Origin: Macrostomum lignano
Lineage: Eukaryota
Length of the DNA: 64,000 bases
Assembly (NCBI GenBank): GCA_002269645.1
Contig: NIVC01000977.1
Location: 310,001-374,000 of the forward strand
Reading direction: 5' to 3'
The translations under genes were made by a program, and so were the position numbers. The stretch's first letter is position 1; the number at the start of each line of letters is the position of its first letter. Shown here piece after piece: positions 4,901 to 31,400 of the stretch. The notes below the pieces were generated by a model that saw only the letters and a program-made list of their open reading frames with translations, was not told the origin of the DNA and did no database searches.

Positions 4901-5261
4901 CAGCAAGACCGACCCCTTCTTCGAGGTCTCACCATGGACCGTGACAAAAGTCCACGGCAACACCCTGCAGATCCAGAGGGGCGGCCAGAGGTGCTCCAGG
5001 CACGCCACCCACGTCAAGCGAGTCTCCCAGGCAGCCGACGAGTGGCCGAGTGGCCCCGGGGAACGCGACAGCGGACAGAACAGCCGGCCGGATGAACCAA
5101 CCGGCCTGCCCGAGCCAACCGGCGACCAGGACGTCCAGCTCGCCAACAGGCCGCACCCCCCGACAGGCCAAGGAGACGCCGAATCGCTACGAAGATGGCG
5201 ACCGGCGAAAGGCTCCGTACATCTGACAGCTGGCGGAACAGCAGCAAGGACTGATCATTGA
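1961..5261 (+). pseudogene. pol: pol (aspartic protease, RT, RNase H, integrase) with a frameshift near 3150
   Basis: Protease LIDSGAS; RT QDLRDVNK, FSELDVAKAFHQI, WVHDDII. The frame changes at DFLAMRLS to AGIQPTDEK. RNase H VDASPTGLGA, YSQTEREAL, TDHKPL. Integrase HQGH..CLSC, LDF, TDNG, NGLVE. Confidence 0.93.
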
Positions 5262-11467: not shown

Positions 11468-12100
11468 AAGTATCATTGTTTATCTATGGCCTGTGCATCA
11501 ATATCATTGTTTATCTATGGCCTGTGCATCAATATCATTGTTTATCTATGGCCTGTGCATCAATAAGTATCATTGTTTATCTATGGCCTGTGCATCAATA
11601 TCATTGTTTATCTGTGGCCTGTGCATCAATATCATTGTTTATCTATGGCCTGCGCATCAATAAGTATCATTGTTTATCTATGGCCTGTGCATCAATATCA
11701 TTGTTTATCTATGGCCTGTGCATCAATATCATTGTTTTTCTATGGCCTGCGCATCAATAAGTATCATTGTTTATCTATGGCCTGTGCATCAATAAGTATC
11801 ATTGTTTATCTATGGCCTGTGCATCAATATCATTGTTTATCTATGGCCTGTGCATCAATATCATTGTTTTTCTATGGCCTGCGCATTAATAAGTATCATT
11901 GTTTATCTATGGCCTGTGCATCAATAAGTATCATTGTTTATCTATGGCCTGTGCATCAACATTATTGTTTATCTATGGCCTGTACATATAATAGCATTGT
12001 TTATTTATGGGTAAACAATATATATATATATATTTATTGTATATATTGAATGTACATTAATATTATTGTTTATCTATGGCCTGAGCATCAATATATGTAC
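11468..12100. repeat. ~31/35-bp minisatellite just downstream of the Dicer 3' end
   Basis: Unit tatcattgtttatctatggcctgtgcatcaa with an optional taag. Confidence 0.92.
12033..12038 (-). terminator. Candidate polyadenylation signal AATAAA for Dicer
   Basis: tttatt on the plus strand, about 220 nt downstream of the Dicer stop codon. Confidence 0.4.
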
Positions 12101-12254
12101 AGAATATGGCCTTCACAATACCCAGCGCCTCAAAAGAAAGTCATTACAGTCATCTAATTTGGGACACCTATTATAGACTTTCAACCTTGGAGATTCGTTG
12201 CTAATTTGGCAGAACAAAAGCAATGAAAGAAACTGAAAATACAGAAATACAGCC

Positions 12255-15200
12255 TTAAATCAAAACAGCTGGCTGCGTGGTACAACTAACGCCAACAACA
12301 ACATCGGCAACATTATTGACAGCGGCAGTTTCAACCTCGACTTCGCCTTCGCCGTCGCCCTCGCTTTCGCTGACTGACGGTGGCGATTTACGCTTGCTGC
12401 CGCCGACGACACCGCCGCCGGCGCTGCTGCACACGGCCGGATCCGTCAGGAATCGCCTGGCCAGAGCCACCCGGCACAGCCGCTTGTTGCGCTCCGCCTC
12501 CTCGTAGACGAAGCCGCTGCCAACTCGCAAGCGCATCCGGGTGGCCGCCAGGGCGTCTGCGGCGGCAGCCACGTCGGGTGTCAACTGCGACTCTGTCGAC
12601 GACGACATGGACTGCAGCATCTCGAACTTGACCGCCAGGCCCATGGAGGCGGCGGTCTCGTGCAGCTGGCGCACCGGGTTGCGGGGCGGCTCGGCCAGGA
12701 AGTCGCGCATCGGCTCCGACATGAGGCGGCGGATCAGCGACCAGGCGGCCGACAGCGACCAGCCGGAATCGGCGAAGACGGCGCCAACCAGGGACTCGAC
12801 TAGGTCGCCAAGAGCCTGGGTTGATTATGAGACGAGGAGGGCAGATGACACAAATAAAATTGGAAAGAAGTGACTCCAAACCACTCTTAAAACAACGAGA
12901 TGTCACGATGCAAGTCATCAAAGAGTTGCTCAAGAGTCACGAGTCGTATCTGAGGCGTGCTTAGAGTCGCTATAGAGTCACTGGATTGTGTTTGAAGAAG
13001 CGCATTTGCGTCGCGCTTGTGACGCAACAGTTCGCCTCTCCGTCGCATTTGACGCGTTTTGAGTCGCTTAAAAAGTCGCAAGACTCGCCCCACAGTCGCT
13101 AGAGTCACCAGTGAGTTGTTTGCAACGACTTTTTAGTGATTATTGTCATGGTATCGTTTTTAACGGATACTCTACTCATGCACACGATCACACAGGGTGT
13201 ACAGCGACACCCTTCAACCGACTAAACTCATGACACAAACTCATATTCGTCCACAGTCTATTGGTCAAACTGGTCAAACTGTACATATCGGTAGTTACCG
13301 AACGTCCCTGGACTCACCTTGACGGCGGACAGACGGACAACCCGAGCTGCGTCGGCTCCAGCATCGGCCACGAACTGGTCGCTCAGCCTTCGGAACCGGT
13401 CCGGGCCATCGAACTGGGCGGCGCTTTCTCGATATTCCATAATGAGATCTTGCAGCGGCTCGTCCATCGAGAGCAGGTGCGACTCGAGGCCGTGTGACAC
13501 GGCCACTGCGGCAAACAGATTGTTGTTGGTCAGCGACATTCGGAGATCCGTGACGGCACCTGATTGAAGGAAATTTCAATAGCCAATCAGAATAGTCCAA
13601 CTAAAATGGCAGCCAATCAGAATGATCTAACTGGAATGACAGACAATCAGAATAGTCCAACTGAAATGACAGCCAATCAGAATGGTCCAACTGGAATGAC
13701 AGCCAATCAGAATAGTCCAACTGGAATGACAGACAATCAGAATGGTCCAACTGGAATGACAGCCAATAAGAATGGTCCAACTGGAATGACAGCCAATCAG
13801 AATGGTCCAACTGGAATGACAGCCAATCAGAATAGTCCAACTGGAATGACAGCCAATCAGAATGGTCCAACTGGAATGACAGCCAATCAGAATAGTCCAA
13901 CTGGAATGACAGCCAATCAGAATAGTCCAACTGGAATGACAGCCAATCAGAATAGTCCAACTGGAATGACAGCCAATCAGAATAGTCCAACTGGAATGAC
14001 AGCCAATCAGAGTCACACGCGGGACTCACCCGGCGAGCCAGTGTCCATGCAGTCGCAGACAGCGTAATGCGTCACCAAATAATCAATAACGGCATCGCCA
14101 AGGAACTCCAATCGTTGGTAGCAGTCGGTCACGTGATTCCACGTGAATGTCGAGTGAGTCACAGCCGACAGGAGAAACTCTCGCCGACGAAACTTGTAGC
14201 CGAGCTTCACCTCTAGCTGGTCGAGATCCGCCATCCCCCAAAACTTAACAAAATCGGGTGATTCGACGCCGATTTCGCCCGGCAACAGAAGCGTCGTAGC
14301 GGCCGGTTCCGCCGGGGTCGGCAGCGAGGCCGATGGAACGCCGAGCCAGCGCAAGAAGGCGTCGGCGGCGTCGCCACCGCAGGCAGACAGGATGAGGCCA
14401 GTCAGAGCTTCGGCCACGTCAGCGACACTTTTGTCGGCCAAATTGCAGCACCAGCGTCGGTTGGCAGAGCTAGCGTCGGCGGTGGGGTCGGCGTCGGGTC
14501 GGGCGCACGGCGGCTGATAGTTCTCCGGCTTGTTGGCGTCCTGCATGCGTCGGAGCAGAAATTCTTCAGTGCCTCACCTTACCTAATTATTCCGTAGGTG
14601 ACTTAAGTAGGTCCCCACCTGTCCATCACTAAACCACACCTGTCCATCACTAAGCTACATCTGTCCCTAACTAAGCCAAACCTGTCCCTAACTAAGCTAC
14701 ATCTGTCCCTAATCAAGCCACACCTGTCCCTAATCAAGCCACACCTGTCCCTAATCAAGCCACACCTGTCCCTAATCAAGCCACACCTGTCCCTAATCAA
14801 GCCACACCTGTCCCTAACTAAGCCACACCTGTCCCTCACTAAGCCACACATGTCCCTAATCAAGCCACACCTGTCCCTAATCAAGCCACACCTGTCCCCA
14901 ACCTACCTGAGCGAACACGAAGCGGTGCAGACGCTTCTCCTTGGCCGCACAGTGCAGGAAAGCATTGCGAATCTCACGCATTCGCAGCCGGGTGAGGCGG
15001 CCCTCCGACACGGTGTGGTCGCTATCATGGAACAGGCGGGTGCTGACGGTGAATTTCAGCCGAGCATCGCCCAGGGTCTCCAACAGCTCCATGCTGTGAA
15101 AGTCGTTGGCGTGGGTCAGCGTGACCGCTTGGAGGCAGCCGGTGAGGGTCAGACCTGACCCGCTGTCGGGGGAGCGGAAACTGGAGGGGGCAGGTGGGGG

Positions 15201-18200
15201 GGGGCGGAAGTGAAGTTGGCGCAACAAAAGATTTGGGAATGTGATTACATGCAATACTGTAGAGCAAGAGAAGTGAGGAGTCAGAGTGCGAAGTAAGGAA
15301 TCAGAGTGCCAAGTAAGGCATCAGAGTGCCAAGTAAGGCATTTAGAGTGCCAAGTAAGGCATTAGAGTGCCAAGTAAGGCATTTAGAGTGCCAAGTGAGG
15401 TATCAGAGTGACAAGTAAGGCATTTAGAGTGCCAAGTGAGGTATCAGAGTGCCAAGTAAGGCATTTAGAGTGCCAAGTAAGGCATTTAGAGTGCCAAGTA
15501 AGGCATCAGAGTGCCAAGTAAGGTATTAGAGTGCCAAGTGAGGAGTCAGAGTGCCAAGTGATGAATCAGAGAGCCAAGTGAGGCATCAGAGTGCCAAGTG
15601 GGGCATCAGAGTGCCAAGTAAGGCATCAGAGTGCCAAGTAAGGCATTTAGAGTGCCAAGTGAGGTATTAGAGTGACAAGTAAGGCATTTAGAGTGCCAAG
15701 TGAGGCATCAGAGTGCCAAGTGAGGCATCAGAGTGCCAAGTGAGGCATCAGAGTGCCAAGTGATCAGAGTGCCAAGTGAGGCATCAGAGTGCCAACTGAG
15801 GAGTCAGAGGGCCAAATGAGGCATTAGAGTGAATAGATAACCGTCAGCTAGTCTCACCCATTTGCAACAATCCATTCCATAACGTCAAACTTCATAAGAG
15901 CCCGCTGTTCCACAGACAGTTGCTGATCAGCCGCAAGACTACAGCCAGAGTAGATAAGTCGCGGGTTCGAATCCACAGCGCAGCCAGTTGACAGCGGAGC
16001 CGATTGAAGCAGGGACATGAGCTCGCAGCCTAGCAGCAGCTGGTTAATCCGGTACACAATGGCTGGCATGGCTCTCAGCTGACACCAAAGTCGCACTTGA
16101 ATGCCGGGCATCGCCAAGAGGCGGCTAACCCGGTCAACGCTGGTCTTGTTCTGCCGAGATAGCAGGCGAACCATGCGACCTTTGGCCGCATTGGGGTTGT
16201 ACACCAGAGCGTCCAGATGGGGCGTGCGGCTGAACTCAACCAGGCCGTTGGGTCGGATAGAGGTCACGTAGTGCCTGGGGTGGCCGGGTTGCCAGGATTT
16301 TAAAATTGCTATTCTTTTTAAGTACCAGATTCTTAGGTAGTTTATGGGGTAGATTCTCTGTGGTAGTTTATGGGGTAGATTCTCTGTGGTAGTTTATAGG
16401 GTAGATTCTCGATGGTAGTTTATGGGGTAGATTCTCTATGGTAGTTTATAGGGTAGATTCTCTGTGATAGTTTATGGTGTAGATTCTCTGTGGTAGTTTA
16501 TGGGGTAGATTCTCTGTGGTAGTTTATAGGGTAGATTCTTGATGGTAGTTTATGGGGTAGATTCTCTATGGTAGTTTATAGGGTAGATTCTCTGTGGTAG
16601 TTTATGGTGTAGATTCTCTGTGGTAGTTTATGGGGTAGATTCTCTGTGGTAGTTTATGGGGTAGATTCTCTGTGGTAGTTTATGGGGTAGATTCTCTGTG
16701 GTAGTTTATGGGGTAGATTCTCTGTGGTAATTTATAGGGTAGATTCTCTATGGTAGTTCATGGGGCAGATTCTCTATGGTAGTTTATGGGGTAGATTCTC
16801 TGTGGTAGTTTATGGGGCAGATTCTCTATGGTAGTTTATGGGGTAGATTCTCTATGGTAGTTTATGGGGTAGATTCTCTGTGGTAGTTTATGGGGTAGAT
16901 TCACTGTGGTAGTTTGTACTCACCAAGACTTTGTCCCCCTGTCCTGCAGCCGCTGTACCAGAACTCCAGGCTTCAGCACGTCGCGATTGGCAGCGACCTC
17001 CACAATGGCCGGTCCAATCAGTGGGTCCGGGCTGGTCAGGTGGCTGAGCAGGTCCCAGTCTATACTACCATTGGGCTGGTTGTCTAAATCGCCCCGAACC
17101 ACCGCAATCAGCTGACAGATAGGCTCCACAGCTCCGTCTGGGTGCTCTGATTCTGCCTCCTTGGGGCTGTCATGGGGAAGGAAGTCAGTTTAATTATTAT
17201 TAAACCGATATGTTTCGTACAACACGTTTTTAGGGAAACAAAACTGTTTATACTAGGGAGGGTTGAAGCCTAGTGGTTAGAGCGTCGGACTCACGGCTGA
17301 AAGGTCGGGGGTTCGATTTCTTTCCGCCCGTCGAACTACTAAGGGAAGATTTTGAGAGAACTAGAGAGACTAGCTAAGGATGTCCGGCAGTTCAGGTTTG
17401 CCCCATTATTGAGAAGCTTGATAAAAAAATCTGACATAGTCGCAACAGGATGTTCATAGTCGTCTGGTGTCCTCTTTTGAAGGTTCAGAAGCACCGCCTG
17501 GGTAAAAGCCAGTGACCAAGGAAGGCAGAGCTGATGCAGACAGTTTTACTGTTAATTTATGGAGGGCTGAAGTAACTATTAATTGAGATTCCTAAGAACA
17601 TGTCTACCATCATCCGCGTGCTGTTCAGAGTAATAATAATGATAATGATAATAATAATAACCGATTACACCTGCCTTAGTGAGCAGATGTGCAACCGACA
17701 GCTCAGCCGCAGCTATTGCGCGGCGCATCTGAAGGCTGCGTACGGCTGTTCAGTCCAAGGACTGGGGGGTCGCCACACACCCTCAATTATTAAAGCTAAT
17801 GCTGGCACCCATTTTACAGCTGGGTGAACTGAAGCAATGCAGAGTTAAGTTGTCTTGCTCAAGGATACAAATTGTTTCAGTAGGATCGGGAATCGAACCC
17901 CCGACCTTCCAGTCGTGAGTCCGACGCTCTGGCCACTAGGCTACAACCCCCCTTCCTCCTCCCTCCCTTCCGGACGCACCCGCCGCCGCTTGGAGGCCAA
18001 TAAAATCTCAGGCCCTTCATCTGCCCAGGCTCGTGCCACCGCAGCATCAGGCGGGTCAGAGGCGCCTGGGCGGCAACCAGCTGGGCCAGTTGACCCTCCG
18101 TCAGCCTCAGCGCCTGGCCGGGTCCTGGACGGAATTCGGCCGGCTCGCATCCGAGAAACAGCGGAAAAGCGAGGCTGTCGGGTAGCGGAGCGCCGCAGGT

Positions 18201-19164
18201 AAGCAGGGCGGGCTGCCAGTCGCAGGGGGGCAGGTGAAGGCCCGGCAGCTTCACGTCCAGCCTGTGACAGTAGAACAGTGGAGCTGCTGTTGAGGTGTGG
18301 CTGTCGCTGCCACTGTCGAAGGCAATCTGGTGCCCGATAGCAGCTGAGGAGCTGCTGGCTCTGGCGACGGGTTTCGGCAGCCAGGCGTGACGGCCGCGCG
18401 TGCCCTGCAAGGCATGAGACGTGTGGAGAATTTGTGCTGTACAAATCTTGGTGAAGGGGGATTTCAAGCAAGTGAATCTGGGGCCGTGGAGTCGTGGAAT
18501 CTCGGAAAGATGGAATTTTGGAGAATCTCCGGAAAGAGGGAATTTCGGAGAACCTCGAAAAGAGAGAATTTTATAAGAATCTTGGGAAGGGGGAATAAAG
18601 AGAATCTTGGGAAGGGGGAATTAAGAGAATCTTGGGAATGGGGAATTAAGAGAATCTTGGGAAGGGGGAATTAAGAGAATCTTGGAGAGGAAATTTAGGA
18701 AAACCTTGAAAAGAGGAGATTTAGAAGAATCTAAGAAATAGGGAAATTCCGAGAATATTGAAAGGTGAATTTCTGAAAAAGCTTTTAAAGGCAATAGACA
18801 GTGGTTTTGGAAAATCAATCTCAGTGTCACCTGTCCCGGCTCGTAGCTGCGCAGTTCTTCCACGGCGCAGCGAGCCTCCCGCTCACTCGGCAGCAGGTGA
18901 TCGTCCAGTTCGCCCGTCTTGTGCAGGAGGCGCACCGCCTCCAGAGCGGCAGATCGTCTGGCATCATCGGCGGAGAGTCGGTCGCCCCGGCACTGCACCG
19001 GCTGCACAATGGGGCAGGGCCTGGGCAGGAACAGGCGGCAGCGATAGCGGCCCGAGGTTGGGTTCAGCGCGGTGTCGAAGTACGGCGATGGGGGCCTGGT
19101 GCAGCCCATGGAGGCCAGCCTAGTGGTGTACCTAAGCGGTTGGAGAATCAGTCGGATGTTACTG

Positions 19165-19213
<49 letters not shown>

Positions 19214-19242
19214 GCTTGTCTGCCTGTCTGTCTGTCTGTCTG

Positions 19243-19315
<73 letters not shown>

Positions 19316-19486
19316 GTCTGTCTGTCTGTCTGTCTGTCTGTCAGTCAGTCTGTCTGCTTGTCTGTCTGTCTGTCAGTCAGTCTGTCTGCTTGTCTGTCTG
19401 CCTGTCTGTCTGTCTGTCTGTGTCTGTCTGTCTGTCTGTCAGTCAGTCTGTCTGCTTGTCTGTCTGTCTGTCAGTCAGTCTGTCTG

Positions 19487-19533
<47 letters not shown>

Positions 19534-22500
19534 GCATGTCTGTCTGCCTGTCTGTCTGTCTGTCTGTCTGCATGTCTGTCTGCCTGCCTGTCTGTCTGTC
19601 TGTCTGTCTTTGTCTTTTATAAAAACTGCAGGTCGGCAGTCATGTCAGAGCACACACCGGTTAATCAGGCTCACGGCAGTCTTCAGCCCGACTTTGGCTC
19701 CGGTAGAGGCCACTTCGTAATAAGCCGGGTGATCGCTCCGGACGCTCAGGTCCAGCGGTGCGGCGCCTTCGCTGGCGTCAGCTGTTGAAGCCGTCGCCCC
19801 TGATTCGTCGGGCTGAATGGATTAAGAAGAAGTGCAGATCCATGACTCAACAGTCGCCTCTCCGTCGCTTTATAGCCGCTTCAGTCATTAAAAAGTTACA
19901 AGAGTCGCCCCAGAGTCTCTAGGGTCACCAGTGAGTTGTTAGCAATGACTCTTTAGCGATTCTTGTCACTGTAACGTTCTCAAAGGAGATATTCTAGACC
20001 ATTTAAACTCATTTTAATACAGAGAATCGAATTCAAAACAATCCCTATCTCATAGTCATATCCCAAACCAAAAGCGATTGCCTCCATTATCATTTCATTC
20101 CTTTTCTTAGCACCAGAGGCGCCAGCACCAGAGGCGCCAGCACCAGAGGCGCCAGCACCAGAGGCGCCAGCACCAGAGGCGCCAGCACCAGAGGCGCCAG
20201 CACCAGAGGCGCCAGCACCAGAGGCGCCAGCACCAGAGGCACCAGCACCAGAGGCGCCAGCACCAGAGGCGCCAGCACCAGAGGCGCCAGCACCAGAGGC
20301 GCCAGCACCAGAGGCGCCAGCACCAGAGGCGCCAGCACCAGAGGCGCCAGCACCAGAGGCGCCAGCACCAGAGGCGCCAGCACCAGAGGCGCCAGCACCA
20401 GAGGCGCCAGCACCAGAGGCGCCAGCACCAGAGGCGCCAGCACCAGAGGCGCCAGCACCAGAGGCACCAGCACCAGAGGCGCCAGCACCAGAGGCGCCAG
20501 CACCAGAGGCGCCAGCACCAGAGGCGCCAGCACCAGAGGCGCCAGCACCAGAGGCGCCAGCACCAGAGGCGCCAGCACCAGAGGCGCCAGCACCAGAGGC
20601 GCCAGCACCAGAGGCGCCAGCACCAGAGGCGCCAGCACCAGAGGCGCCAGCACCAGAGGCGCCAGCACCAGAGGCGCCAGCACCAGAGGCGCCAGCACCA
20701 GAGGCGCCAGCACCAGAGGCGCCAGCACCAGAGGCGCCAGCACCAGAGGCGCCAGCACCAGAGGCGCCAGCACCAGAGGCGCCAGCACCAGAGGCGCCAG
20801 CACCAGAGGCGCCAGCACCAGAGGCGCCAGCACCAGAGGCACCAGCACCAGAGGCGCCAGCACCAGAGGCGCCAGCACCAGAGGCGCCAGCACCAGAGGC
20901 GCCAGCACCAGAGGCGCCAGCACCAGAGGCGCCAGCACCAGAGGCGCCAGCACCAGAGGCGCCAGCACCAGAGGCGCCAGCACCAGAGGCGCCAGCACCA
21001 GAGGCGCCAGCACCAGAGGCGCCAGCACCAGAGGCACCAGCACCAGAGGCACCAGCACCAGAGGCGCCAGCACCAGAGGCGCCAAAGCGAGTGTCTTACC
21101 TCAGAGTCCTCATCCGACATGGCATCAAAAGCGGCCCGCATTTTAAGCAGGCTGCGTTGAACCGCTTCGTCCAGCCACTGATAATAGACCAGCTTGGACT
21201 TGCAGTCGTTCTCCTCGTCCTCATTTACCAGCATAACGTAACGCGACTTAACAGCTCTGGCGCGTCCTTTCGATTGGACGTAGGAACGAAACTCTGGCGG
21301 GAAGTTGAACTTCACGACCAGATTGCACTGCCGGACGTTCATGCCTTCCTCGATGACTCGGGTGGCAATGAGTGTGTTGACTTCTCCTGTGCGGAACTGC
21401 TTGAGCACGCGGTCCTGCTGGGATAGAGACATCGCCACCTGGTTTGACTGCTCGCTGGACAGGCCGTGACCGGTGACGAACTCAGGCCGGAGGAAGCTCA
21501 GGTCGCTTTTGTAGCCGGTCATCTTTTAATTGGCGTAGCAACAAAACTCGACAGTTATTTTAGGCTATTTCCAGATCCCCGATGCTTGATTTCCAAATCC
21601 CAAATACCAGATGCTTGATTTTCAAGTCCCAAATATCAGATGCTTGATTTCCTGATCCCAAATACCAGATGCTTAATTCCAGATCCCAAATACCAGATGC
21701 TTGATTCGAGATCCCAGATCTCAGATGCTAGATCCCAAACACTAGATGCTTGATTCCAGATCCCAAATACCAGATGCTTGATTTCAGATCCCAAATACCA
21801 GATGCTTGATTCCAGATCCCAAATACCAGATGCTTGATTCCAGATCCCAAATACCAGATGCTTGATTCGAGATCCCAGATCTCAGATGCTAGATCCCAAA
21901 CACTAGATGCTTGATTCCAGATCCCAAATACCAGATGCTTGATTCGAGATCCCAGATCTCAGATGCTAGATCCCAAACACTAGATGCTTGATTCCAGATC
22001 CCAAATACCAGATGCTTGATTCCAGATCTCAAATACCAGATGCTTGATTCGAGATCCCAGATCTCAGATGCTAGATCCCAAACACTAGATGCTTGATTCC
22101 AGATCCCAAATACCAGATGCTTGATTCCAGATCCCAAATACCAGATGCTTGATTCCAGATCCCAAATACCAGATGCTAGATTCCAGATCCCAAATACCAG
22201 ATGCTTGATTCCAGATCCCAAATACCAGATGCTAGATTCCAGATCCCAAATACCAGATGCTTGATTCCAGATCCCAAATACCAGATGCTTGATTCCAGAT
22301 CCCAAATACCAGATGCTAGATTCCAGATCCCAAATACCAGATGCTTGATTCCAGATCCCAAATACCAGATGCTTGATTCCAGATCCCAAATATCAGATGC
22401 TTGATTTCCTGATCCCAAATACCAGATGCTTAATTCCAGATCCCAAATACCAGATGCTTGATTCGAGATCCCAGATCTCAGATGCTAGATCCCAAACACT

Positions 22501-25500
22501 AGATGCTTGATTCCAGATCCCAAATACCAGATGCTTGATTTCAGATCCCAAATACCAGATGCTTGATTCCAGATCCCAAATACCAGATGCTTGATTCCAG
22601 ATCCCAAATACCAGATGCTTGATTCGAGATCCCAGATCTCAGATGCTAGATCCCAAACACTAGATGCTTGATTCCAGATCCCAAATACCAGATGCTTGAT
22701 TCGAGATCCCAGATCTCAGATGCTAGATCCCAAACACTAGATGCTTGATTCCAGATCCCAAATACCAGATGCTTGATTCCAGATCTCAAATACCAGATGC
22801 TTGATTCGAGATCCCAGATCTCAGATGCTAGATCCCAAACACTAGATGCTTGATTCCAGATCCCAAATACCAGATGCTTGATTCCAGATCCCAAATACCA
22901 GATGCTTGATTCCAGATCCCAAATACCAGATGCTAGATTCCAGATCCCAAATACCAGATGCTTGATTCCAGATCCCAAATACCAGATGCTTGATTCCAGA
23001 TCCCAAATACCAGATGCTTGATTCCAGATCCCAAATACCAGATGCTTGATTCCAGATCCCAAATACCAGATGCTTGATTCCAGATCCCAAATACCAGATG
23101 CTTGATTCCAGATCCCAAATACCAGATGCTTGATTCCAGATCCCAAATACCAGATGCTTGATTCCAGATCCCAAATACCAGATGCTTGATTCCAGATCCC
23201 AAATACCAGATGCTTGATTCCAGATCCCAAATACCAGATGCTTGATTCCAGATCCCAAATACCAGATGCTTGATTCCAGATCCCAAATACCAGATGCTTG
23301 ATTCCAGATCCCAAATACCAGATGCTTGATTCCAGATCCCAAATACCAGATGCTTGATTCCAGATCCCAAATACCAGATGCTTGATTCCAGATCCCAAAT
23401 ACCAGATGCTTGATTCCAGATCCCAAATACCAGATGCTTGATTCCAGATCCCAAATACCAGATGCTTGATTCCAGATCCCAAATACCAGATGCTTGATTC
23501 CAGATCCCAAATACCAGATGCTTGATTCCAGATCCCAAATACCAGATGCTAGATTGCAAAGACGAACTTGCACACAAACAGTAACTGCACCAACCTCGCA
23601 CATGAACTCCTTCACAGCCATCGCAATGACCCGCTCCTGTGTGAACACCACGGCTCTGAAAGCCTCACCATCCGGCAGTTCTTTGTGATGTTTTATCAGC
23701 GAATCCATCAGCTTCAGACACTTCTCCGAGCACAGATCCTCAGGAGTCTGGGCTGATAGCGCCTTCAGCTTGTACTGCTCAGATGCATCCAGCAGAATCT
23801 GTTGCGTCTCTTTTAAAGCGTCCTGCTCTTCTGGTTTCAGCGGCCCGGATGCGCCCTGAATGACATCGCTCAGCTCCTTGACATACATCTGCATCACCCG
23901 GAAGCAGCAGAAGTGGCCGAGCTCTTTCAGCGAGCTCAGCGAATCCGACAGGGCTCGGTGGCATCTGCGAAACGGCGACTCGCTTGAGCCTGAGCCTGGG
24001 GCTGGCGATTCGAATTTGAAATGCGGAAATATTGTTCACACAAAATATAGAATACAGTACTCGTATATACCAGCGCTAGGGCGGCAATTCTGAACTGGTT
24101 ATCCCAGTGTCTAATCCTCCACAGGTTTGGATTATCCCAGTGTCTAATCCTCCACAGGTTTGGATTATCCCAGTGTCTAATCCTCCACAGGTTTGGATTA
24201 TCCCAGTGTCTAATCCTCCACAGGTTTGGATTATCCCAGTGTCTAATCCTCCACAGGTTTGGATTATCCCAGTGTCTAATCCTCCACAGGTTTGGATTAT
24301 CCCAGTGTCTAATCCTCCACAGGTTTGGATTATCCCAGTGTCTAATCCTCCACAGGTTTGGATTATCCCAGTGTCTAATCCTCCACAGGTTTGGATTATC
24401 CCAGTGTCTAATCCTCCACAGGTTTGGATTATCCCAGTGTCTAATCCTCCACAGGTTTGGATTATCCCAGTGTCTAATCCTCCACAGGTTTGGATTATCC
24501 CAGTGTCTAATCCTCCACAGGTTTGGATTATCCCAGTGTCTAATCCTCCACAGGTTTGGATTATCCCAGTGTCTAATCCTCCACAGGTTTGGATTATCCC
24601 AGTGTCTAATCCTCCACAGGTTTGGATTATCCCAGTGTCTAATCCTCCACAGGTTTGGATTATCCCAGTGTCTAATCCTCCACAGGTTTGGATTATCCCA
24701 GTGTCTAATCCTCCACAGGTTTGGATTATCCCAGTGTCTAATCCTCCACAGGTTTGGATTATCCCAGTGTCTAATCCTCCACAGGTTTGGATTATCCCAG
24801 TGTCTAATCCTCCACAGGTTTGGATTATCCCAGTGTCTAATCCTCCACAGGTTTGGATTATCCCAGTGTCTAATCCTCCACAGGTTTGGATTATCCCAGT
24901 GTCTAATCTTCAAAAAGATCGGATTATTTCAGTGTCTAATCCACAACAATATCGGATTATCCCAGTGTCTAATCCACAACAGGATCGGATTATCATAGTG
25001 TCTAATCCCCCATAGGATCGGATTATCCCAGTGTCTAATCCCCCATAGGATCGGATTATCCCAGTGTCTAATCCCCCATAGGATCGGATTATCCCAGTGT
25101 CTAATCCCCCATAGGATCGGATTATCCCAGTGTCTAATCCCCATAGGATCGGATTATCCCAGTGTCTAATCCCCCATAGGATCGGATTATCCCAGTGTCT
25201 AATCCCCCATAGGATCGGATTATCCCAGTGTCTAATCCACAACAAGATCGGATTATCCCAGTGTCTAATCCCCCATAGGATCGGATTATCCCAGTGTCTA
25301 ATACTTCATAGCATTGGATTATCCCAGTGTCTAATCCCCCATAGGATCGGATTATCCTAGTGTCTAATACTTCATAGCATTGGATTATCCCAGTGTCTAA
25401 TCCTTTATAGAATCATATTCTTAAAAAACTCAAACACTGCAGTGTATGACTTCAAACCCAGCTGATCAATATGATTAATAATTTGATCTGAAGCAACTAA

Positions 25501-28125
25501 CCGGAGCTCCGACCCCTCGAACTCCGACCCGAATTAGCTCTGCCGTTATCTAATCGCTGTTTAGCGTCAGCCAGGGAGCGGCACAGCAGCAGGTAGATCG
25601 GGTCGCTGATGGTCTCGGACTTCTCCTCCTCAGTGCTGTACAGCGGCTTGTAGAGCAGCGTCTCTTCGCTGCAGCGCAGTCGAAATCCTTCGGCCTCCTG
25701 GTGGGTGGAGGTGACGATGCGAGCGTCCAGCATCTTCCGCTGCAGTTCATCAAGTCGCTCCTGAAATGTCGCAACAGGTAGGTTAAAAAATTCACTTTTA
25801 GGGCTTAGAAATTAAGCTAGAACAATAGAAATGGGCAAATAGGCAGGGCCTAGAATAGTATAAGCAGCGTAGCAACGGAGGGGTGGACATACATGATCTT
25901 GAAGACCACGGTGTTTTTGTTTGTTTGAAGGCAGAAGATCGCATTATATCACTCAGTCATTAGGACTCAGGATTCTCAGCACCTAATAATCCATAAGATC
26001 GGATTATCCCAGTGTCTAATCCTCCATAAGATCGGATTATCCCAGTGTCTAACCCTCCATAGAAACGGATTATCCCAGTGTCTAACCCTCCATAGAAACG
26101 GATTATCCCAGTGTCTAATCCTCCATAAGATTGGATTATCCCAGTGTCTAACCCTCCATAAGATCGGATTATCCCAGTGTCTAACCCTCCATAGAAACGG
26201 ATTATCCCAGTGTCTAATCCTCCATAAGATTGGATTATCCCAGTGTCTAACCCTCCATAAGATCGGATTATCCCAGTGTCTAACCCTCCATAGAAACGGA
26301 TTATCCCAGTGTCTAATCCTCCATAAGATTGGATTATCCCAGTGTCTAACCCTCCATAAGATCGGATTATCCCAGTGTCTAACCCTCCATAGAAACGGAT
26401 TATCCCAGTGTCTAACCCTCCAAAGAAACGGATTATGCCAGTGTCTAACCCTCCATAGCAACGGATTATGCCAGTGTCTAACCCTCCAAAGAAACGGATT
26501 ATGCCAGTGTCTAACCCTCTATAGCAACGGATTATGCCAGTGTCTAACCCTCCAAAGAAACGGATTATGCCAGTGTCTAACCCTCCAAAGAAACGGATTA
26601 TGCCAGTGTCTAACCCTCCAAAGAAACGGATTATCCCAGTGTCTAACCCTCCAAAGAAACGGATTATGCCAGTGTCTAACCCTCCATAGCAACGGATTGT
26701 CCCTGTATCTAAAACGTTAGAGAATCGGATTATCCCAGAGTCTAATCCTTCGTAGGATCGGATTATCCCAGTGTCTAATACATTAAAGCATCGGATTATC
26801 CCACTATCTAATCCCTACCTGCAGCTTGTTCCGCCTGATATTGCCATTAAACAGACAGGCGGTGAGGCCAACCAGCCGCATTCCAGTCCGATCCCAGCCT
26901 TTCTGAGACATCTCCAACAGGCGCTGACAGATTGCGGCATAGGCGTCGCCCTTGTCAAGGTGGTGACACTCGTCCAGAACTAGCAGAGACACCCAGTGAG
27001 GCCTGGCCTTGGCGTGGTTGAGAAGGTCCTTGAAAATGTCGGCAGTCATCACCAGGACCCGGTGCTGCTCAAACATCTGACGCCATTTGTCGCCTGCCCA
27101 GAGGTCGATCATTTCGCCGCCCATGTCGCCAATGAATTCGCCAACGTCCTTGGAATCTTGGGCGGTGAACAGGCAGCGGCGAATCTCTGCGGCCTGCTGG
27201 CGGACCAGCGGCACTGGAGAGCAGCAGAAACAGGTGGCTGAGTGAGGGCTGAGGTGGCTGAGGTGGCTGAGTGAGGGCTGAGGTGGCTGAGTGAGGGCTG
27301 AGGTGGCTGAGTGAGGGCTGAGGTGGCTGAGTGAGGGCTGAGGTGGCTGAGTGAGGGCTGAGGTGGCTGAGTGAGGGCTGGGGTGGCTGACTGAGGGCTT
27401 TGGTGGATGAGTGAGGGCTGAGGTGGCTGAGTGAGGGCTGGGGTGGCTGACTGAGGGCTTTGGTGGATGAGTGAGGGCTGAGGTGGCTGAGTGAGGGCTG
27501 AGGTGGCTGAGTGAGGGCTGAGGTGGCTGAGTGAGAGCTGAGTTGGCTGACGGCTGGGGTGGCTGACTGAGGGCTTTAGTGGATGAGTGAGGGCTGAGGT
27601 GGCTGAGTGAGAGCTGAGTTGGCTGACGGCTGGGGTGGCTGACTGAGGGCTTTAGTGGATGAGTGAGGGCTGAGGTGGCTGAGTGAGGGCTGAGGTGGCT
27701 GAGTGAGGGCTGAGGTGGCTGAGTGAGGGCTGAGGTGGCTGAGTGAGGGCTGAGGTGGCTGAGTGAGAGCTGAGTTGGCTTAGGGCTGGGGTGGCTGAGT
27801 GAGGGCTTTGGTGGCTAAGTCAAGATTGGGTTTGTCAGTTCGCCTACCCTAAAAAAGGACTTTATAAACAAATACTAGAAGGCCAACTCACCATTCTTCA
27901 CCAGAAACACACACCGTTGACCGCCCTTGTCCAATTCAATTCGAGAGTTGGCCAGATAATACCGAATAAGCATAACGGAGATGAAAGTCTTGCCGCTGCC
28001 CGTGTCAAGCTTCACTATGATGTTGCGCTTGATGCCTTCGCTGGCGATGTCAATCTGAGGCGGGGGCAGTTAGGCAGGCAGATGCAGATGGACAGAGAGA
28101 CAAAGAGAGACAGACAGAGAGACAA

Positions 28126-28178
<53 letters not shown>

Positions 28179-28179
28179 C

Positions 28180-28230
<51 letters not shown>

Positions 28231-28231
28231 C

Positions 28232-28306
<75 letters not shown>

Positions 28307-28448
28307 CAAAGACAGATAGACAGACAGCCAATAGGACATATAGACACGAAGCCATTACAAGCTTTACCTGATATTGCCGAGGTGCATAGACAGGTGCAGC
28401 TTGCTGGTTTTGGTAATTTTCCCCATTGGCATCAGAATTGGTTTCCAT
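12255..28448 (-). CDS. Dcr: Dicer (DExD/H helicase, DUF283, platform/reduced PAZ, RNase IIIa, RNase IIIb, dsRBD); 15 coding exons, 4797 nt, about 1598 aa
   Basis: Exons (minus): 28448-28368, 28054-27892, 27213-26819, 25760-25502, 24001-23595, 21522-21100, 19812-19658, 19131-18831, 18404-18040, 17166-16924, 16274-15858, 15180-14907, 14540-14030, 13559-13318, 12815-12255. All introns are GT-AG and phases are consistent. Motifs: [89 protein letters not shown]. Confidence 0.95.
13025..13160 (+). repeat. Dispersed repeat in Dicer intron 14, second copy at 19845-19980
   Basis: caacagttcgcctctccgtcgc...ttaaaaagtcgcaagactcgccccacagtcgctagagtcaccagtgagttgtt, with a diverged same-orientation copy in intron 6. 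Confidence 0.75.
13575..14011. repeat. 30-bp minisatellite, Dicer intron 13
   Basis: (agccaatcagaatagtccaactggaatgac)n. Confidence 0.95.
14612..14899. repeat. 21-bp minisatellite, Dicer intron 12
   Basis: (ccacacctgtccctaatcaag)n ending next to the splice donor. Confidence 0.95.
15270..15832. repeat. 20/21-bp minisatellite, Dicer intron 11
   Basis: (cagagtgccaagtaaggcat)n and variants. Confidence 0.95.
16335..16915. repeat. 26-bp minisatellite, Dicer intron 10
   Basis: (ggtagtttatggggtagattctctgt)n. Confidence 0.95.
17260..17640 (+). mobile_element. tRNA-derived SINE-like element, plus strand, Dicer intron 9
   Basis: Head gggttgaagcctagtggttagagcgtcggactcacggctgaaaggtcgggggttcgatt has Pol III A and B boxes. 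The body runs to a (TAA)n tract at ~17631; the body extent is inferred. Confidence 0.55.
17631..17950 (-). mobile_element. tRNA-derived SINE, minus strand, Dicer intron 9
   Basis: The reverse complement reads ggggttgtagcctagtggccagagcgtcggactcacgactggaaggtcgggggttcgattcccg (A and B boxes), then ccttgagcaagacaacttaac..cacccagctgtaaaatgggt, similar to conserved central domains of metazoan SINE superfamilies, then an (ATT/ATC)n tail. Confidence 0.8.
18520..18765. repeat. Degenerate ~24-bp purine-rich repeat, Dicer intron 8
   Basis: gagaatcttgggaagggggaatta units. Confidence 0.8.
19162..19612. repeat. (TCTG)n microsatellite, Dicer intron 7
   Basis: Read directly. Confidence 0.98.
20108..21083. 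repeat. 15-bp minisatellite (~65 copies), Dicer intron 6
   Basis: (gcaccagaggcgcca)n, almost homogeneous, with rare G>A variants. Confidence 0.98.
21570..23552. repeat. 28-bp minisatellite with a 757-bp higher-order duplication, Dicer intron 5
   Basis: (agatgcttgattccagatcccaaatacc)n; the variant block aaatatcagatgcttgatttcctg occurs at 21631 and 22388. Confidence 0.95.
24097..25402. repeat. 33-bp minisatellite, Dicer intron 4
   Basis: (ggattatcccagtgtctaatcctccacaggttt)n, homogeneous to ~24905, then cccccataggatc variants. Confidence 0.97.
25995..26815. repeat. 33-bp minisatellite of the same family, Dicer intron 3
   Basis: (ggattatcccagtgtctaaccctccatagaaac)n and variants. Confidence 0.95.
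27232..27815. repeat. 20-bp minisatellite, Dicer intron 2
   Basis: (gagtgagggctgaggtggct)n. Confidence 0.95.
28088..28327. repeat. (GACA)n microsatellite, Dicer intron 1
   Basis: Read directly. Confidence 0.97.
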
Positions 28449-28454
28449 TATAGA

Positions 28455-28495
28455 CTGAAACAATCGGGTTTTAAAAAGAAGAAATCTAAATTAAA
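28455..28495 (-). promoter_or_regulatory. Splice acceptor 6 nt upstream of the Dicer ATG (5'UTR intron or trans-splice site)
   Basis: Minus strand reads tttagatttcttctttttaaaacccgattgtttcAG|tctataATG, preceded by about 2 kb of very AT-rich DNA. Confidence 0.5.
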
Positions 28496-31400
28496 ATAAA
28501 TTATCATAGATTAATTAAGAACAAAACTAACAAAAAAACAGATTAAATATTCTCATGGTAAGTTAAGATAAAAATACAAATAAATATCAGTACAAATCAG
28601 ATTGTATTATTGGTAAATATACTTAGGATACTTATCTTTATTAAAAATATAAAGATGCTTTAAAAAGATGTTTATTGTATAGCTCAAAGAACAAAAATAT
28701 ATGTACAATTGATTACATTTTTTAGTAATTTTGAAAAAGTAAAAAAGTGCAAGTGACACACAAAGGTCATTGTCTTTTCTTATCTCTAGCTATTAAAATT
28801 TTACTGTGCAACTGCTACTAACTTAAGCTTTTTAATATGTTAGTCATTTAGTTTTATTTGTTTATTTGTCTTTTCATTTTTGGAATTTAAAAGTTCAAAG
28901 TAAAAAACAGAAAAAGCCTTCCATAAATGGTAAAAAATCTATGAAAAGATTGTTTCCAAAGTTGGGTAATTTATAGCAAACATTGCTGCAGACTCAATTC
29001 CAATATTCCATGTGACTTATATGTAAATTTTGTTTAGAAATTTAGATGTTCTATTAAGCAGCATGTTTTTTACAAAGGAAAAATGAAGAACCACCTATAT
29101 ACTATACTAAGGTAAAAGAACATTAGATAAAATGATCATTGCTACTTTGTAAATAATGTTGTAAGAATAAATAGATTGGATACTTTAAAATAATTGATTA
29201 TTGACTACACAATGAAAATTCTTGTTTAAATTACTAAAATATTAAGCATTTTTATTAGAACCTAATTTCAATCAAAACTGACTATTTCAATCAAATAAAC
29301 AAATTGCCCTGTCTTGATAATGACTAATATAGTCAAAATGAAAATGCATGGAAAAAATAGAAACAGATATTGATATTATCTTTTCTTTTATTTAAAATTT
29401 TAAAAGATAGTTAAAATTATAAGTTGTTAATTTTTTTCAATTGTATACATAGATGGAAACATTTTAATTTTAGTTATAAGATTTTTTAATATAATCATAT
29501 CCTTTAATATTTATACTATTTTATCAAATCATATATACCCAACTGTTTATTAACCTAACCAATCTAAGTATCTAACTAATAGAAATTGTGGTAAACCAAG
29601 GATAGGTAGCTACAAAATTGATTACCAAAATCAAAAGATGAGAAAGCAGAAAGCAAAGAAACAAAAAAGCAAAAAAGCAAAAAAATGACAAATTAAAAAC
29701 AGTATATAAAAACTAAATAAAAATCATAACACATTAATACAAAATGCAAAAATGTTCAAAATGCAGCAAAATTATCAAATGAACAAATATTTTTTGAATA
29801 AATATAATGAGACCATACACATTTAATACTTGGCCAACCTAGCCCATTTTTCTAGCAAAAGATCTGGCCAAGGTAAATTGCAAAAACACTAACCTAAACA
29901 TAAAAACATAGTACTATAGGACAAAAAGGCATTTTGCCTTAATAATACAGTTATTTTTTGCCATTTATATAAAACTTTATAAATATTTGCTTTATTAAGG
30001 ATTTTTTAATTTAGACAAGTTGCATTTTTGGTTAAAAAATTAGTTATAAGTAATATAAATCATGGGGTTATACATATATACTATAGGCATTAGATACTAT
30101 TTACAAAATAAATTTTTTGTCATTGTCATTTATATTTTAGGGATATAAGGCCTAATAATCATCTTTAATTTTCTAATTTTTAGCTATTAGTCATTTATTA
30201 TATAAAAGCAATAAAAATGAATATTAATATTATAAATCTAGTAAGCCTATAAAAATATTTTGCTTTATCCTTTGGTTTAATAGACTTAAATGGATAATCT
30301 CTAATTGATAATGAATAATGTTCTCCATTTTGTTAATAGGATTTTATAAAATAGAATTTTAATAGGCCTATTAGCATTTTTAATTAAATAAGCACCAATG
30401 CTTTGATTCAAAATTTTTCATAAAAGTTATAGATTGGACCCTGTGTAGCTATGATAACTACATGTGACAAGTATGAGATTCAAATTATGCTTTTGCCTTC
30501 TATAACATTAATACCCTATATTAACTCTTTAGGCTCTTAGCTAAGCCTAGGCCCTAGGCCTATATAGAAAATTCTGATGGCTAACTTGAATCAGTACAGT
30601 GTGCTTTCAGTATTCAGATAGACATTCAGTCAGGCTAACAGTAGCAGCATATTTATCTTTGGTTCTAAAATATAAAATAGGAAATTTGGCGTTGCCAATG
30701 AGTAGCAGTAGTACTAAGTAACAAGAGCATTAGAGGAAATATGCTTGATTCCATACAGAGACACATAGTAAAATAGAGAATAAACTTGCTTTTTAACAAT
30801 CTGTTTCCTACGCTATAGCTTTGTGACACCCAAGATCTTTTTTATGCTTCGCGACGTGAGCCTCGAATCAGTTGGATCAGCTGGTTTCATTCAGGGACTC
30901 GAAAACAGTCATGCCACGGTAATATCGAAAACGAAAATTGTTTTCTCAGAAAATAAAGAGTTCATATACAATCAAGTCACTCGTAATAAAAACAAACAAT
31001 AAAATCAAAAAAATTTTTATAAAATAAGGAAAACTTTTTAAAACAAAGCATGCATTTTTTAGGAAAAAATTAATCCTATTTATGATTTTTCAGTAGTCTA
31101 GCAAAGTTTAATGTATTTGAACTCTTAACTTTGAGAAACGGCTTGCAAACCTTATGGTTGATTGAAAGGTGACACGGTAAACAAGGGACGCCCAATCGCT
31201 ACGACGGCGGCTTTGCTACTGGGTCCGTACTGCCTCCCTGTGGCGAACGCTATTCGCATCGCAAGAAAGGGGGGAAAGAAGCTCATCACACAACCTGTGC
31301 ATACATAATTTAATTTACATGTAAATGTACAACGTACACGTACACAGTGGCGTAGCCAGGAATTTCAATTGGGGGCCGGGCCGAGTCGGCTTGGCTGGCC

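What the first reader, a model, noticed from the sequence alone, without database searches (positions are those of the whole stretch)
15858..17166. Dicer with intact helicase and RNase III sites but a collapsed PAZ domain
Seen: the spliced model keeps ATPase motifs (TGSGKT, DECH, QSKGRAR) and both acidic pairs in each RNase III domain (LETLGD/ADVAE and LEFLGD/GDLVE). Between the PAZ-start motif (WHYVTSI) and the connector helix ([19 protein letters not shown]) there are only 58 aa, versus roughly 100 in human Dicer as recalled. The TFxEYYxxKY 3'-overhang pocket motif is not recognisable. Known: PAZ anchors the dsRNA end and sets product length, and helicase-active Dicer-2-type enzymes handle long or viral dsRNA. 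Inference: this may be a lineage-specific Dicer paralog that measures or loads substrate differently and could give non-canonical small-RNA lengths.
Basis: partly seen in the sequence, partly recalled or inferred. Interest (0 to 1): 0.75.

Follow-up and report, generated by a model that had tools for sequence, protein, structure and literature searches.

The report
Flatworm Dicer-2 missing its PAZ pocket helix
This is the already catalogued Dicer-2 gene of the flatworm Macrostomum lignano; it really has lost about 30 residues of the PAZ domain that normally grip the RNA 3' end, which makes it a further example of the degenerate-PAZ Dicer-2 enzymes already reported in flatworms.

Summary
The window comes from Macrostomum lignano. 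Its minus strand (28448..12255) carries a 15-exon Dicer gene. The spliced product equals GenBank PAA74104.1 (BOX15_Mlig002075g4), a model built from RNA-seq.

The helicase motifs and all four RNase III acidic pairs are intact. The same interval is 82-98 aa in ten other Dicers, four of them flatworm Dicer-2 proteins.

The missing ~30 aa are the loop and helix that carry the TFxEYYxxKY motif. Pfam's PAZ model finds nothing here. It does score two of those flatworm Dicer-2 proteins and the M. lignano Dicer-1 fragment above threshold.

AlphaFold2 predicts the platform and connector well but only three PAZ strands. A control Dicer run with the same 17 sequences gives a complete, confident PAZ.

No hidden exon exists: introns 10 and 11 are about 90% and 83% minisatellite.

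The gene is not new. Fontenla et al. 2021 list BOX15_Mlig002075 as DCR-2 in their supplement and place a separate DCR-1 in their tree. HMM-undetectable PAZ domains in flatworm Dicer-2 are published. The deletion itself appears to be specific to Macrostomum. Any effect on product length is untested.

The parts
12255..28448 (-). Complete coding region of M. lignano Dicer-2 (BOX15_Mlig002075 family). It has 15 exons with GT-AG introns and encodes 1616-1618 aa.
   Evidence: Splice model. It is 100% identical to PAA74104.1. Pfam finds ResIII/DEAD, Helicase_C, Dicer_dimer and two Ribonuclease_3 domains. PDB phmmer best hits are human and mouse Dicer at E about 1e-112.
21100..28448 (-). Exons 1-6: DExH helicase. 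Motif I is TGSGKT (28003-27986), motif II is DECH (26974-26963) and motif VI is QSKGRAR (21276-21256).
   Evidence: The region scores 330 bits against the reconstructed AncD1D2 helicase-DUF283 entry 9mw6.
18831..19812 (-). Exons 7-8: Dicer dimerisation / DUF283 domain.
   Evidence: Pfam PF03368, E 1.7e-15.
17980..18404 (-). Exon 9: platform domain. It starts with the conserved basic motif GTRGRH.
   Evidence: AlphaFold2 pLDDT is 76-87 with a beta-sheet plus helix. Foldseek matches the Dicer platform-PAZ-connector cassettes with probability 1.0. hhalign gives probability 97.8%.
16924..17166 (-). Exon 10: linker and first PAZ strand (VLVQRL, about 16964-16947). The YR of the canonical 'PxYRN' strand is replaced by LQ.
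16121..16274 (-). First part of exon 11: PAZ remnant. It holds strands WHYVTSI and VEFSR, then a 35-aa low-confidence stretch.
   Evidence: AlphaFold2 gives pLDDT 58-70 for the strands and about 33 for model residues 967-1001. There is no Pfam PAZ hit.
16244..16258 (-). Deletion site. I955 is followed directly by RPNG, where other Dicers carry about 30 aa (a loop plus the helix with TFxEYYxxKY).
   Evidence: MAFFT and BLASTP alignments to polyclad DCR-2 Pvi60657 and others. Interval lengths are 55 aa versus 82-98 aa.
16001..16096 (-). Connector helix ([32 protein letters not shown]).
   Evidence: It is the only part of the middle region that tblastn and phmmer recognise in other Dicers. pLDDT is 82-84.
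16275..16923 (-). Intron 10. About 90% of it is a 26-nt minisatellite (16336-16915), which leaves no room for a hidden exon.
   Evidence: Tandem Repeats Finder. tblastn with 40 Dicer middle regions finds nothing here.
15181..15857 (-). Intron 11. About 83% of it is a 20/41-nt minisatellite (15271-15831).
17167..17979 (-). Intron 9. It has no tandem array, contains tRNA-like SINE-looking sequence and has no Dicer-like reading frame.
12255..15180 (-). Exons 12-15: RNase IIIa (LETLGD and ADVAE), RNase IIIb (LEFLGD and GDLVE), and a C-terminal region conserved with polyclad DCR-2 that looks like a dsRBD.

Best explanation
The locus is one of at least three near-identical copies of the Macrostomum lignano Dicer-2 gene. 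Shown: it is transcribed, intact and under purifying selection. It keeps a DExH helicase with complete ATPase motifs, DUF283, the platform, the connector helix and both RNase III catalytic centres. Within a single exon its PAZ domain lacks about 30 residues: the loop and alpha-helix that carry the TFxEYYxxKY tyrosines forming one wall of the 3'-overhang pocket. The YR of the first PAZ strand is also replaced. What is left is a three-strand remnant of the beta-barrel. Inferred: the enzyme can no longer anchor a 2-nt 3' overhang in the canonical way. It probably engages long dsRNA through its helicase, threading it with ATP as Drosophila Dicer-2 does on blunt dsRNA. Product length would then be set by the platform/PAZ remnant-to-RNase III distance, possibly with lower fidelity. 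Pre-miRNA processing, which depends on end recognition, would fall to the separate Dicer-1 (Mlig011615), whose fragment has a normal PAZ.
For: Identity and gene model: the product is 100% identical to PAA74104.1. The GenBank annotation of Mlig_3_7 comes from a genome-guided RNA-seq transcriptome (PMC5730564). Classification: the supplement of PMC8191739 lists BOX15_Mlig002075 as DCR-2. Its tree holds Mli02075g1 beside the flatworm DCR-2 proteins and Drosophila Dcr-2, and Mli11615g2 among the DCR-1 proteins. Polyclad DCR-2 Pvi60657 is the best-scoring relative, 571 summed bits against 470 or less for non-flatworm Dicers. Deletion: the interval is 55 aa versus 82-86 aa in four other flatworm DCR-2 and 82-98 aa in six other animal Dicers. 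Pfam PAZ is negative here. It is above threshold in Pvi60657 (31.7 bits), Mfu84166 (31.3) and the M. lignano DCR-1 fragment (52.6). Structure: in the AlphaFold2 model the platform and connector have pLDDT 75-87. The PAZ has three strands at 58-70, followed by 35 residues at about 33. Foldseek still finds the Dicer platform-PAZ-connector cassettes. The control (Scylla Dicer, same 17 sequences) gives a full PAZ with the helix at pLDDT 85-96. No hidden exon. Selection: against copy g1 there are 26 synonymous and 9 non-synonymous differences, pN/pS 0.11. The platform-PAZ-connector part gives 0.23. Catalytic and ATPase motifs.
Against: No biochemical or small-RNA evidence ties this protein to any product. 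The AlphaFold2 alignment is shallow (17 rows) and holds no close relative, because no homologue of the middle region outside M. lignano was detectable. The low-confidence 35 residues could therefore fold into a substitute pocket wall. The selection estimate rests on 35 substitutions between very recent copies. Six of the nine amino-acid changes fall in the platform-PAZ-connector part, so constraint there may be weaker. Flatworm sampling is thin, with no other macrostomorph, so the age of the deletion is unknown. The helicase motifs are intact, but vertebrate Dicer also keeps them without using ATP.
Confidence: 0.72

Rival explanations
1. Annotation artefact: a missed or alternative exon in introns 9-11 restores a full PAZ domain.
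For: Nearly every intron carries a repeat array that stays open in several frames, so exon calling by eye is risky. Older ML2 gene models of this gene are badly wrong.
Against: The strand before the gap (HYVTSI) and the strand after it (LVEF...) are contiguous in one exon, so no intron exists where the residues are missing. The model equals the RNA-seq-derived GenBank protein, and the same protein length is annotated in three genomic copies. tblastn with 40 Dicer middle regions finds only the connector helix between 14800 and 19300. Introns 10 and 11 are about 90% and 83% minisatellite.
Confidence: 0.03
2. The PAZ is fully functional but too diverged to recognise. Other residues, such as the low-confidence stretch 967-1001, rebuild a 3'-end pocket, and the enzyme works like an ordinary Dicer-2.
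For: The remnant is not decaying: codons 900-1040 show 5 synonymous and 1 non-synonymous difference. The overall cassette fold is retained. hhalign can align VEFSRTPH to the TFxEYYxxKY helix. RNAi by dsRNA soaking is said to work well in this species (general knowledge, not checked here).
Against: The interval is 27-31 aa shorter than in four flatworm orthologues. The better-supported alignment, to the closest relative Pvi60657, pairs [15 protein letters not shown] with LVEVCRLPTLHDTAVY, the strand after the helix. That leaves the helix deleted. The aromatic pocket residues are gone (YR to LQ; no EYY). AlphaFold2 places no helix there, whereas the control does.
Confidence: 0.17
3. The gene is a redundant, decaying or regulatory Dicer copy with no dicing role of its own.
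For: M. lignano is a recent polyploid with many duplicated genes (PMC5730564). Amino-acid changes between copies concentrate in the platform-PAZ region.
Against: Three copies keep full-length open frames. All ATPase and RNase III catalytic residues are intact. pN/pS is 0.11 overall and 0.05 in the RNase III half. The gene is the only DCR-2 listed for the species.
Confidence: 0.06

Closest known systems
Flatworm Dicer-2 (DCR-2) group, e.g. Prostheceraeus vittatus Pvi60657, Schmidtea mediterranea SmeT073604/SMESG000073604 and Mfu84166 (Fontenla et al. 2017, 2021)
   Same: [quoted passage not shown] It is 32-33% identical to Pvi60657 over about 1,300 aligned residues. It is listed as DCR-2 in the published table and included in the published tree.
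   Different: Those four proteins keep the 82-86-aa interval with the TF/YxE..xxKY helix. The two I scanned (Pvi60657 and Mfu84166) pass the Pfam PAZ threshold. The M. lignano protein lacks that segment.
Drosophila melanogaster Dicer-2 (PDB 7W0A-F, 7V6B/C, 6BU9)
   Same: The helicase has intact ATPase motifs. It is the siRNA-class paralogue that exists beside a miRNA-class Dicer-1. The modelled cassette matches its platform-PAZ region in Foldseek.
   Different: Drosophila Dicer-2 has a complete PAZ with 3'-end and phosphate pockets. These are reported to be needed for exact 21-nt products (Kandasamy and Fukunaga 2016, as cited in PMC11114477). Sequence similarity is low, 235 bits against 378 for human Dicer.
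Dicers reported with absent or divergent PAZ: cestode and planarian Dicer-2, Trichoplax DicerA (PMC3991619), lophotrochozoan DICER2 (PMC11114477), dust-mite Dcr2/3 (PMC5805368)
   Same: The PAZ is not found by HMMs and the 3'-pocket residues are not conserved.
   Different: Most of those lophotrochozoan DICER2 proteins are also reported to lack the helicase. Here the helicase is complete and the defect is a defined ~30-aa deletion. One published case may be a mislabelled Drosha: Gao's Smed Dicer-2 carries the same gene number, 000125.07, that Fontenla lists under DRSH-1.
Varroa destructor Dicer-like isoform X3 (P0009)
   Same: It lacks the same loop-plus-helix segment (58-aa interval) and the PAZ HMM is negative.
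   Different: It is an unrelated lineage (mite). The isoform label means the gap could come from alternative splicing, which I did not examine.
Budding-yeast Dcr1 (inside-out measuring)
   Same: It would be a precedent for dicing without a PAZ ruler (recalled from the literature, not tested here).
   Different: Yeast Dcr1 has no helicase, platform or connector and only one RNase III domain per chain. This protein keeps all of them, so it is not a member of that class.

Membership tests
Dicer (class 3 RNase III) | Two tandem RNase III domains, each with its acidic catalytic pairs | tested here: met
   Pfam Ribonuclease_3 is found twice. LETLGD/ADVAE and LEFLGD/GDLVE are present.
Dicer (class 3 RNase III) | N-terminal DExD/H helicase followed by the Dicer dimerisation (DUF283) domain | tested here: met
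   ResIII/DEAD, Helicase_C and PF03368 are found. Motifs I, II and VI are intact.
Dicer (class 3 RNase III) | Platform-PAZ-connector cassette | tested here: met
   Foldseek probability is 1.0 to the human cassette 4NGB/4NH3-6 and to full-length Dicers. hhalign probability is 97.8%.
Dicer (class 3 RNase III) | Complete PAZ domain with a 3'-overhang pocket (Pfam PF02170; TFxEYYxxKY helix) | tested here: not met
   There is no PF02170 hit at E<=10. The helix segment is deleted. AlphaFold2 shows three strands only, while the control shows a full PAZ.
Dicer (class 3 RNase III) | C-terminal dsRNA-binding domain | tested here: inconclusive
   Pfam reports no dsrm hit. The C-terminal ~80 aa do align with polyclad DCR-2 (NPVRxLHE ... 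RNKxxCxxALARxxL).
Animal Dicer-2 subfamily | Groups with Dicer-2 rather than Dicer-1 in phylogeny | tested here: inconclusive
   The published tree puts Mli02075g1 next to the flatworm DCR-2 proteins and Dme_dcr2, on a long branch (1.52), with SH-like support of 0.74 or less at the adjoining nodes. The authors call it DCR-2. My NJ tree places it inside animals (86%) but outside the Dicer-1 cluster, and it had no bona fide Dicer-2 reference. The best pairwise relative is polyclad DCR-2.
Animal Dicer-2 subfamily | Coexists with a separate Dicer-1 that has a canonical PAZ | tested here: met
   The M. lignano DCR-1 fragment Mli0017378 scores 52.6 bits on PF02170 and carries SFEEYYLKKY. Mli11615g2 sits in the DCR-1 clade.
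Animal Dicer-2 subfamily | ATP-dependent, helicase-driven processing of long dsRNA into siRNAs | not testable with these tools
   Only motif conservation can be shown. Enzymology is needed.

The most novel reading that the evidence does not exclude
M. lignano Dicer-2 is a natural pocket-less Dicer. It loads long dsRNA only through its ATP-driven helicase and measures with something other than the PAZ 3' pocket. It would then be the source of the uncharacterised, high-complexity ~20-nt small-RNA class seen in this animal (PMC4604429). That would give a natural experiment on what the PAZ pocket contributes to siRNA length.
Probability: 0.2. Interest if true: 0.55.

Novelty: new member of a known kind. 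Interest (0 to 1): 0.3.

Why it matters
PAZ is the textbook ruler of Dicer. Published surveys say that many flatworm Dicer-2 proteins lack a detectable PAZ, but their authors warned that some of this variation could come from fragmentary data. For M. lignano I show that the defect is real. It is a clean ~30-aa loss of the 3'-pocket helix inside one exon. It is present in the RNA-supported GenBank model and in the other two annotated copies, which differ by one residue in that interval. The enzyme around it is otherwise complete and under constraint. M. lignano is a tractable laboratory animal with RNAi by soaking and with transgenesis. It could therefore be used to ask how a helicase-bearing Dicer sets product length without the pocket. 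The finding refines an existing picture and does not open a new one.

Tried and rejected
1. Sequence relatives of the platform-PAZ-connector region. phmmer against 1.84 billion cluster representatives and a word-indexed search returned only M. lignano fragments, several of them misassembled ML2 models. This gave no outside diversity for covariation or for a deep AlphaFold2 alignment.

2. A third homologue search with the RNase III half. It was meant to pull out flatworm Dicer-2 proteins or a second M. lignano Dicer. It returned mostly unnamed 600-780-aa PAZ+RNase III proteins and no flatworm. The flatworm sequences came from the supplement of PMC8191739 instead.

3. A Biopython bootstrap tree timed out. 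I replaced it with a numpy NJ tree, which cannot separate Dicer-1 from Dicer-2 because no bona fide Dicer-2 reference was in the set.

4. hhalign's alternative alignment of VEFSRTPH to the pocket helix. I rejected it in favour of the alignment to the closest relative Pvi60657.

5. The 5'-phosphate pocket. The GTRGRH motif is retained, but the alignment around the second basic cluster is too uncertain to score, so I make no claim.

6. Drosha was considered and rejected, because the helicase and DUF283 are present.

7. ARAGORN finds no tRNA gene in the tRNA-like intron 9 sequences.
Full report
WHAT IS AT THE LOCUS

The window is eukaryotic.

I built a 15-exon model with GT-AG introns and consistent phases, running from 28448 to 12255 and encoding 1616 aa. 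Exon 10 is 17166-16924 and exon 11 is 16274-15858, so the finding's coordinates are exons 10-11 plus intron 10.

A search of the 5.8-billion-protein collection returned a 100% identical, full-coverage match. It is PAA74104.1, 'hypothetical protein BOX15_Mlig002075g4' of the flatworm Macrostomum lignano. My model differs from it only at the exon 4/5 junction, where GenBank uses an acceptor 6 nt upstream.

The GenBank annotation of this assembly was made from a genome-guided RNA-seq transcriptome (PMC5730564). The exon 10/11 junction therefore already has RNA support.

Two more genomic copies, g1 and g2, encode proteins that differ at 9 and 6 residues.

DOMAINS

- Pfam finds ResIII/DEAD, Helicase_C, Dicer_dimer and two RNase III domains. 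It finds no PAZ, even at E<=10, on the whole protein or on the isolated region.
- phmmer against PDB sequences gives human and mouse Dicer at about 1e-112. The platform-PAZ part is unaligned except for the connector helix.

THE OBSERVATION

HYVTSI and LWCQL... lie in the same exon with 55 residues between them. The same interval, measured between the homologous strand and the connector-helix tryptophan, is as follows:

| Protein | Interval (aa) |
|---|---|
| M. lignano Dicer-2 (this window) | 55 |
| Polyclad DCR-2 Pvi60657 | 84 |
| A second flatworm DCR-2 | 82 |
| Mfu84166 (flatworm DCR-2) | 86 |
| Planarian SmeT073604 | 86 |
| Amphioxus, nematode, cockroach, crab, springtail and predatory-mite Dicers | 82-98 |
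| Varroa Dicer-like isoform X3 | 58 |

Only the Varroa isoform is as short as the M. lignano protein.

MAFFT alignments and the BLASTP alignment to the closest relative Pvi60657 agree on what is missing. M. lignano [15 protein letters not shown] pairs with Pvi LVEVCRLPTLHDTAVY, which is the strand after the helix. The missing piece is the preceding loop and the helix that carries TFxEYYxxKY. In addition, the 'YR' of the first PAZ strand reads 'LQ'.

As a control for the HMM, PF02170 scores above its 28.8-bit threshold on the same region of three proteins: Pvi60657 (31.7 bits), Mfu84166 (31.3 bits) and the M. lignano Dicer-1 fragment (52.6 bits). It gives nothing on the M. lignano Dicer-2 or the Varroa isoform.

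IS A HIDDEN EXON POSSIBLE?

No. The residues are missing from the interior of one exon.

- tblastn with the middle regions of 40 Dicers against 14800-19300 recovers only the connector helix.
- Intron 10 is about 90% a 26-nt minisatellite and intron 11 about 83% a 20/41-nt minisatellite.
- Intron 9 holds SINE-like sequence with no Dicer-like frame.

STRUCTURE

AlphaFold2 was run on residues 727-1088 with a 17-row alignment. It gave mean pLDDT 60.5 and pTM 0.61.

- The platform sheet and helix are confident (pLDDT 76-87), and so are the connector helices (82-84).
- The PAZ part consists of three strands, VLVQRL, KSWHYVTSI and VEFSR, at pLDDT 58-70.
- These are followed by 35 residues at pLDDT about 33.

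Foldseek still retrieves Dicer platform-PAZ-connector cassettes first, with probability 1.0 and TM 0.47-0.53 normalised to the 4NGx crystal cassettes. hhalign against the canonical alignment gives 97.8%.

As a control I put the crab Dicer first in the same 17 sequences. The result was mean pLDDT 80 and a complete PAZ, including the pocket helix (residues 209-217), at pLDDT 85-96. The poor PAZ in the flatworm model is therefore not simply an effect of alignment depth. The caveat remains that no close relative of the flatworm sequence was available.

IS THE REGION DECAYING?

The evidence available says no, but the numbers are small. I aligned the window's coding sequence to copy g1 (locus L001). 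There are 35 differences, 26 synonymous and 9 non-synonymous.

| Region | pN/pS |
|---|---|
| Whole coding sequence | 0.11 |
| Helicase half | 0.06 |
| RNase III half | 0.05 |
| Platform-PAZ-connector | 0.23 (9 synonymous, 6 non-synonymous) |
| Codons 900-1040 | 5 synonymous, 1 non-synonymous |

These values are consistent with a constrained gene. Constraint on the middle part may be somewhat looser.

WHAT IT IS CALLED

The supplementary gene table of Fontenla et al. 2021 (PMC8191739) lists BOX15_Mlig002075 as the M. lignano DCR-2. Their alignment row Mli02075g1 starts with this protein's N-terminus. Their tree places it on a long branch next to the flatworm DCR-2 proteins and Drosophila Dcr-2. 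Mli11615g2 sits in the DCR-1 clade.

BLASTP agrees: polyclad DCR-2 gives 571 summed bits, against 470 or less for non-flatworm Dicers. My own NJ tree only shows that the protein lies within animal Dicers (86% bootstrap) and outside the Dicer-1 cluster.

The same supplement gives M. lignano DCR-1 fragments with a textbook PAZ motif, YRNFDQPQFYFVSQ...SFEEYYLKKY...QPLLDVE.

The protein is therefore an ancient paralogue, not a lineage-specific one. What looks lineage-specific is the deletion.

PRIOR KNOWLEDGE

- Gao et al. 2014 found no PAZ by Pfam or SMART in Dicer-2 of several flatworms, Trichoplax and Trichinella.
- Fontenla et al. 2017 and 2021 describe reduced domain sets in flatworm Dcr-2. 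They warn that variation among 'turbellarians' might come from fragmentary transcriptomes.
- The 2024 lophotrochozoan survey reports that most DICER2 proteins lack both the helicase and PAZ yet endo-siRNAs exist.
- Dust-mite Dcr2/3 have divergent PAZ domains.

The general phenomenon is published. The additions here are that, for M. lignano, it is real at genome level, that it is a defined deletion of the pocket helix, and that the helicase is complete.

LIKELY MECHANISM (INFERRED)

Without the aromatic wall of the 3' pocket, canonical anchoring of a 2-nt overhang is unlikely. Motifs I, II and VI of the helicase are intact. The enzyme therefore most plausibly engages long dsRNA helicase-first and cleaves processively, as described for Drosophila Dicer-2.

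Length would then be set by the geometry of the retained platform, PAZ remnant and connector relative to the RNase III centre. Dicer-1 would handle pre-miRNAs.

A published but uncharacterised ~20-nt, high-complexity small-RNA population in this species is a lead. It is not evidence.

VERDICT

This is a further, well-defined member of the known class of Dicer-2 enzymes with a degenerate PAZ. Interest is modest.

Noticed in passing
window 12000-29000 (all Dicer introns): Nearly every intron of the gene holds a tandem-repeat array (periods 4 to 41 nt, up to about 2 kb; adjacent introns 3 and 4 share a related 33-nt unit). Several arrays stay open in two or three frames for hundreds of codons. 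Older ML2 gene models (P0077, P0079) read through them and produced chimeric 'proteins'.
   Followed up: partly
window 1828-5261 (+): Two overlapping long ORFs encode aspartyl protease, reverse transcriptase, RNase H and integrase domains. This is a Ty3/gypsy-type LTR retrotransposon pol region.
   Followed up: no
window 36668-37864 (-) and 53042-54118 (+): There is a protein-kinase-domain ORF and a galactosyltransferase-domain ORF, so neighbouring genes exist. The kinase probably explains the UniRef name 'Protein kinase domain-containing protein' given to a fused ML2 model of the Dicer (P0077).
   Followed up: no
window about 17250-17330 and 17880-17940 (intron 9): Two tRNA-like stretches (…GGTTCGATT…) resemble tRNA-derived SINEs. 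ARAGORN calls no tRNA gene anywhere in the window.
   Followed up: partly
window 55050-57881, both strands: Very long ORFs (869-943 aa) are open on both strands with strong GC and AT skew and no Pfam hit. They are probably another repeat array rather than genes.
   Followed up: no
P0009 (Varroa destructor Dicer-like isoform X3), not in the window: This mite protein lacks the same PAZ loop-plus-helix segment (58-aa interval) and gets no PAZ HMM hit. It is either an independent loss or a splice isoform.
   Followed up: partly
literature (PMC3991619 versus PMC5594548): Gao et al. 2014 label mk4.000125.07.01 as S. mediterranea Dicer-2 and describe it as lacking PAZ. It carries the same gene number that Fontenla et al. 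2017 list as Drosha (Sme.000125.07). That published 'PAZ-less planarian Dicer-2' may therefore be a Drosha. The DCR-2 used by Fontenla (SmeT073604) keeps the helix segment.
   Followed up: partly
L001 (copy g1, NIVC01000176.1) versus window: The homeologous copies differ by 0.7% in coding sequence. Six of the nine amino-acid differences lie between residues 819 and 1062 (platform-PAZ-connector).
   Followed up: yes
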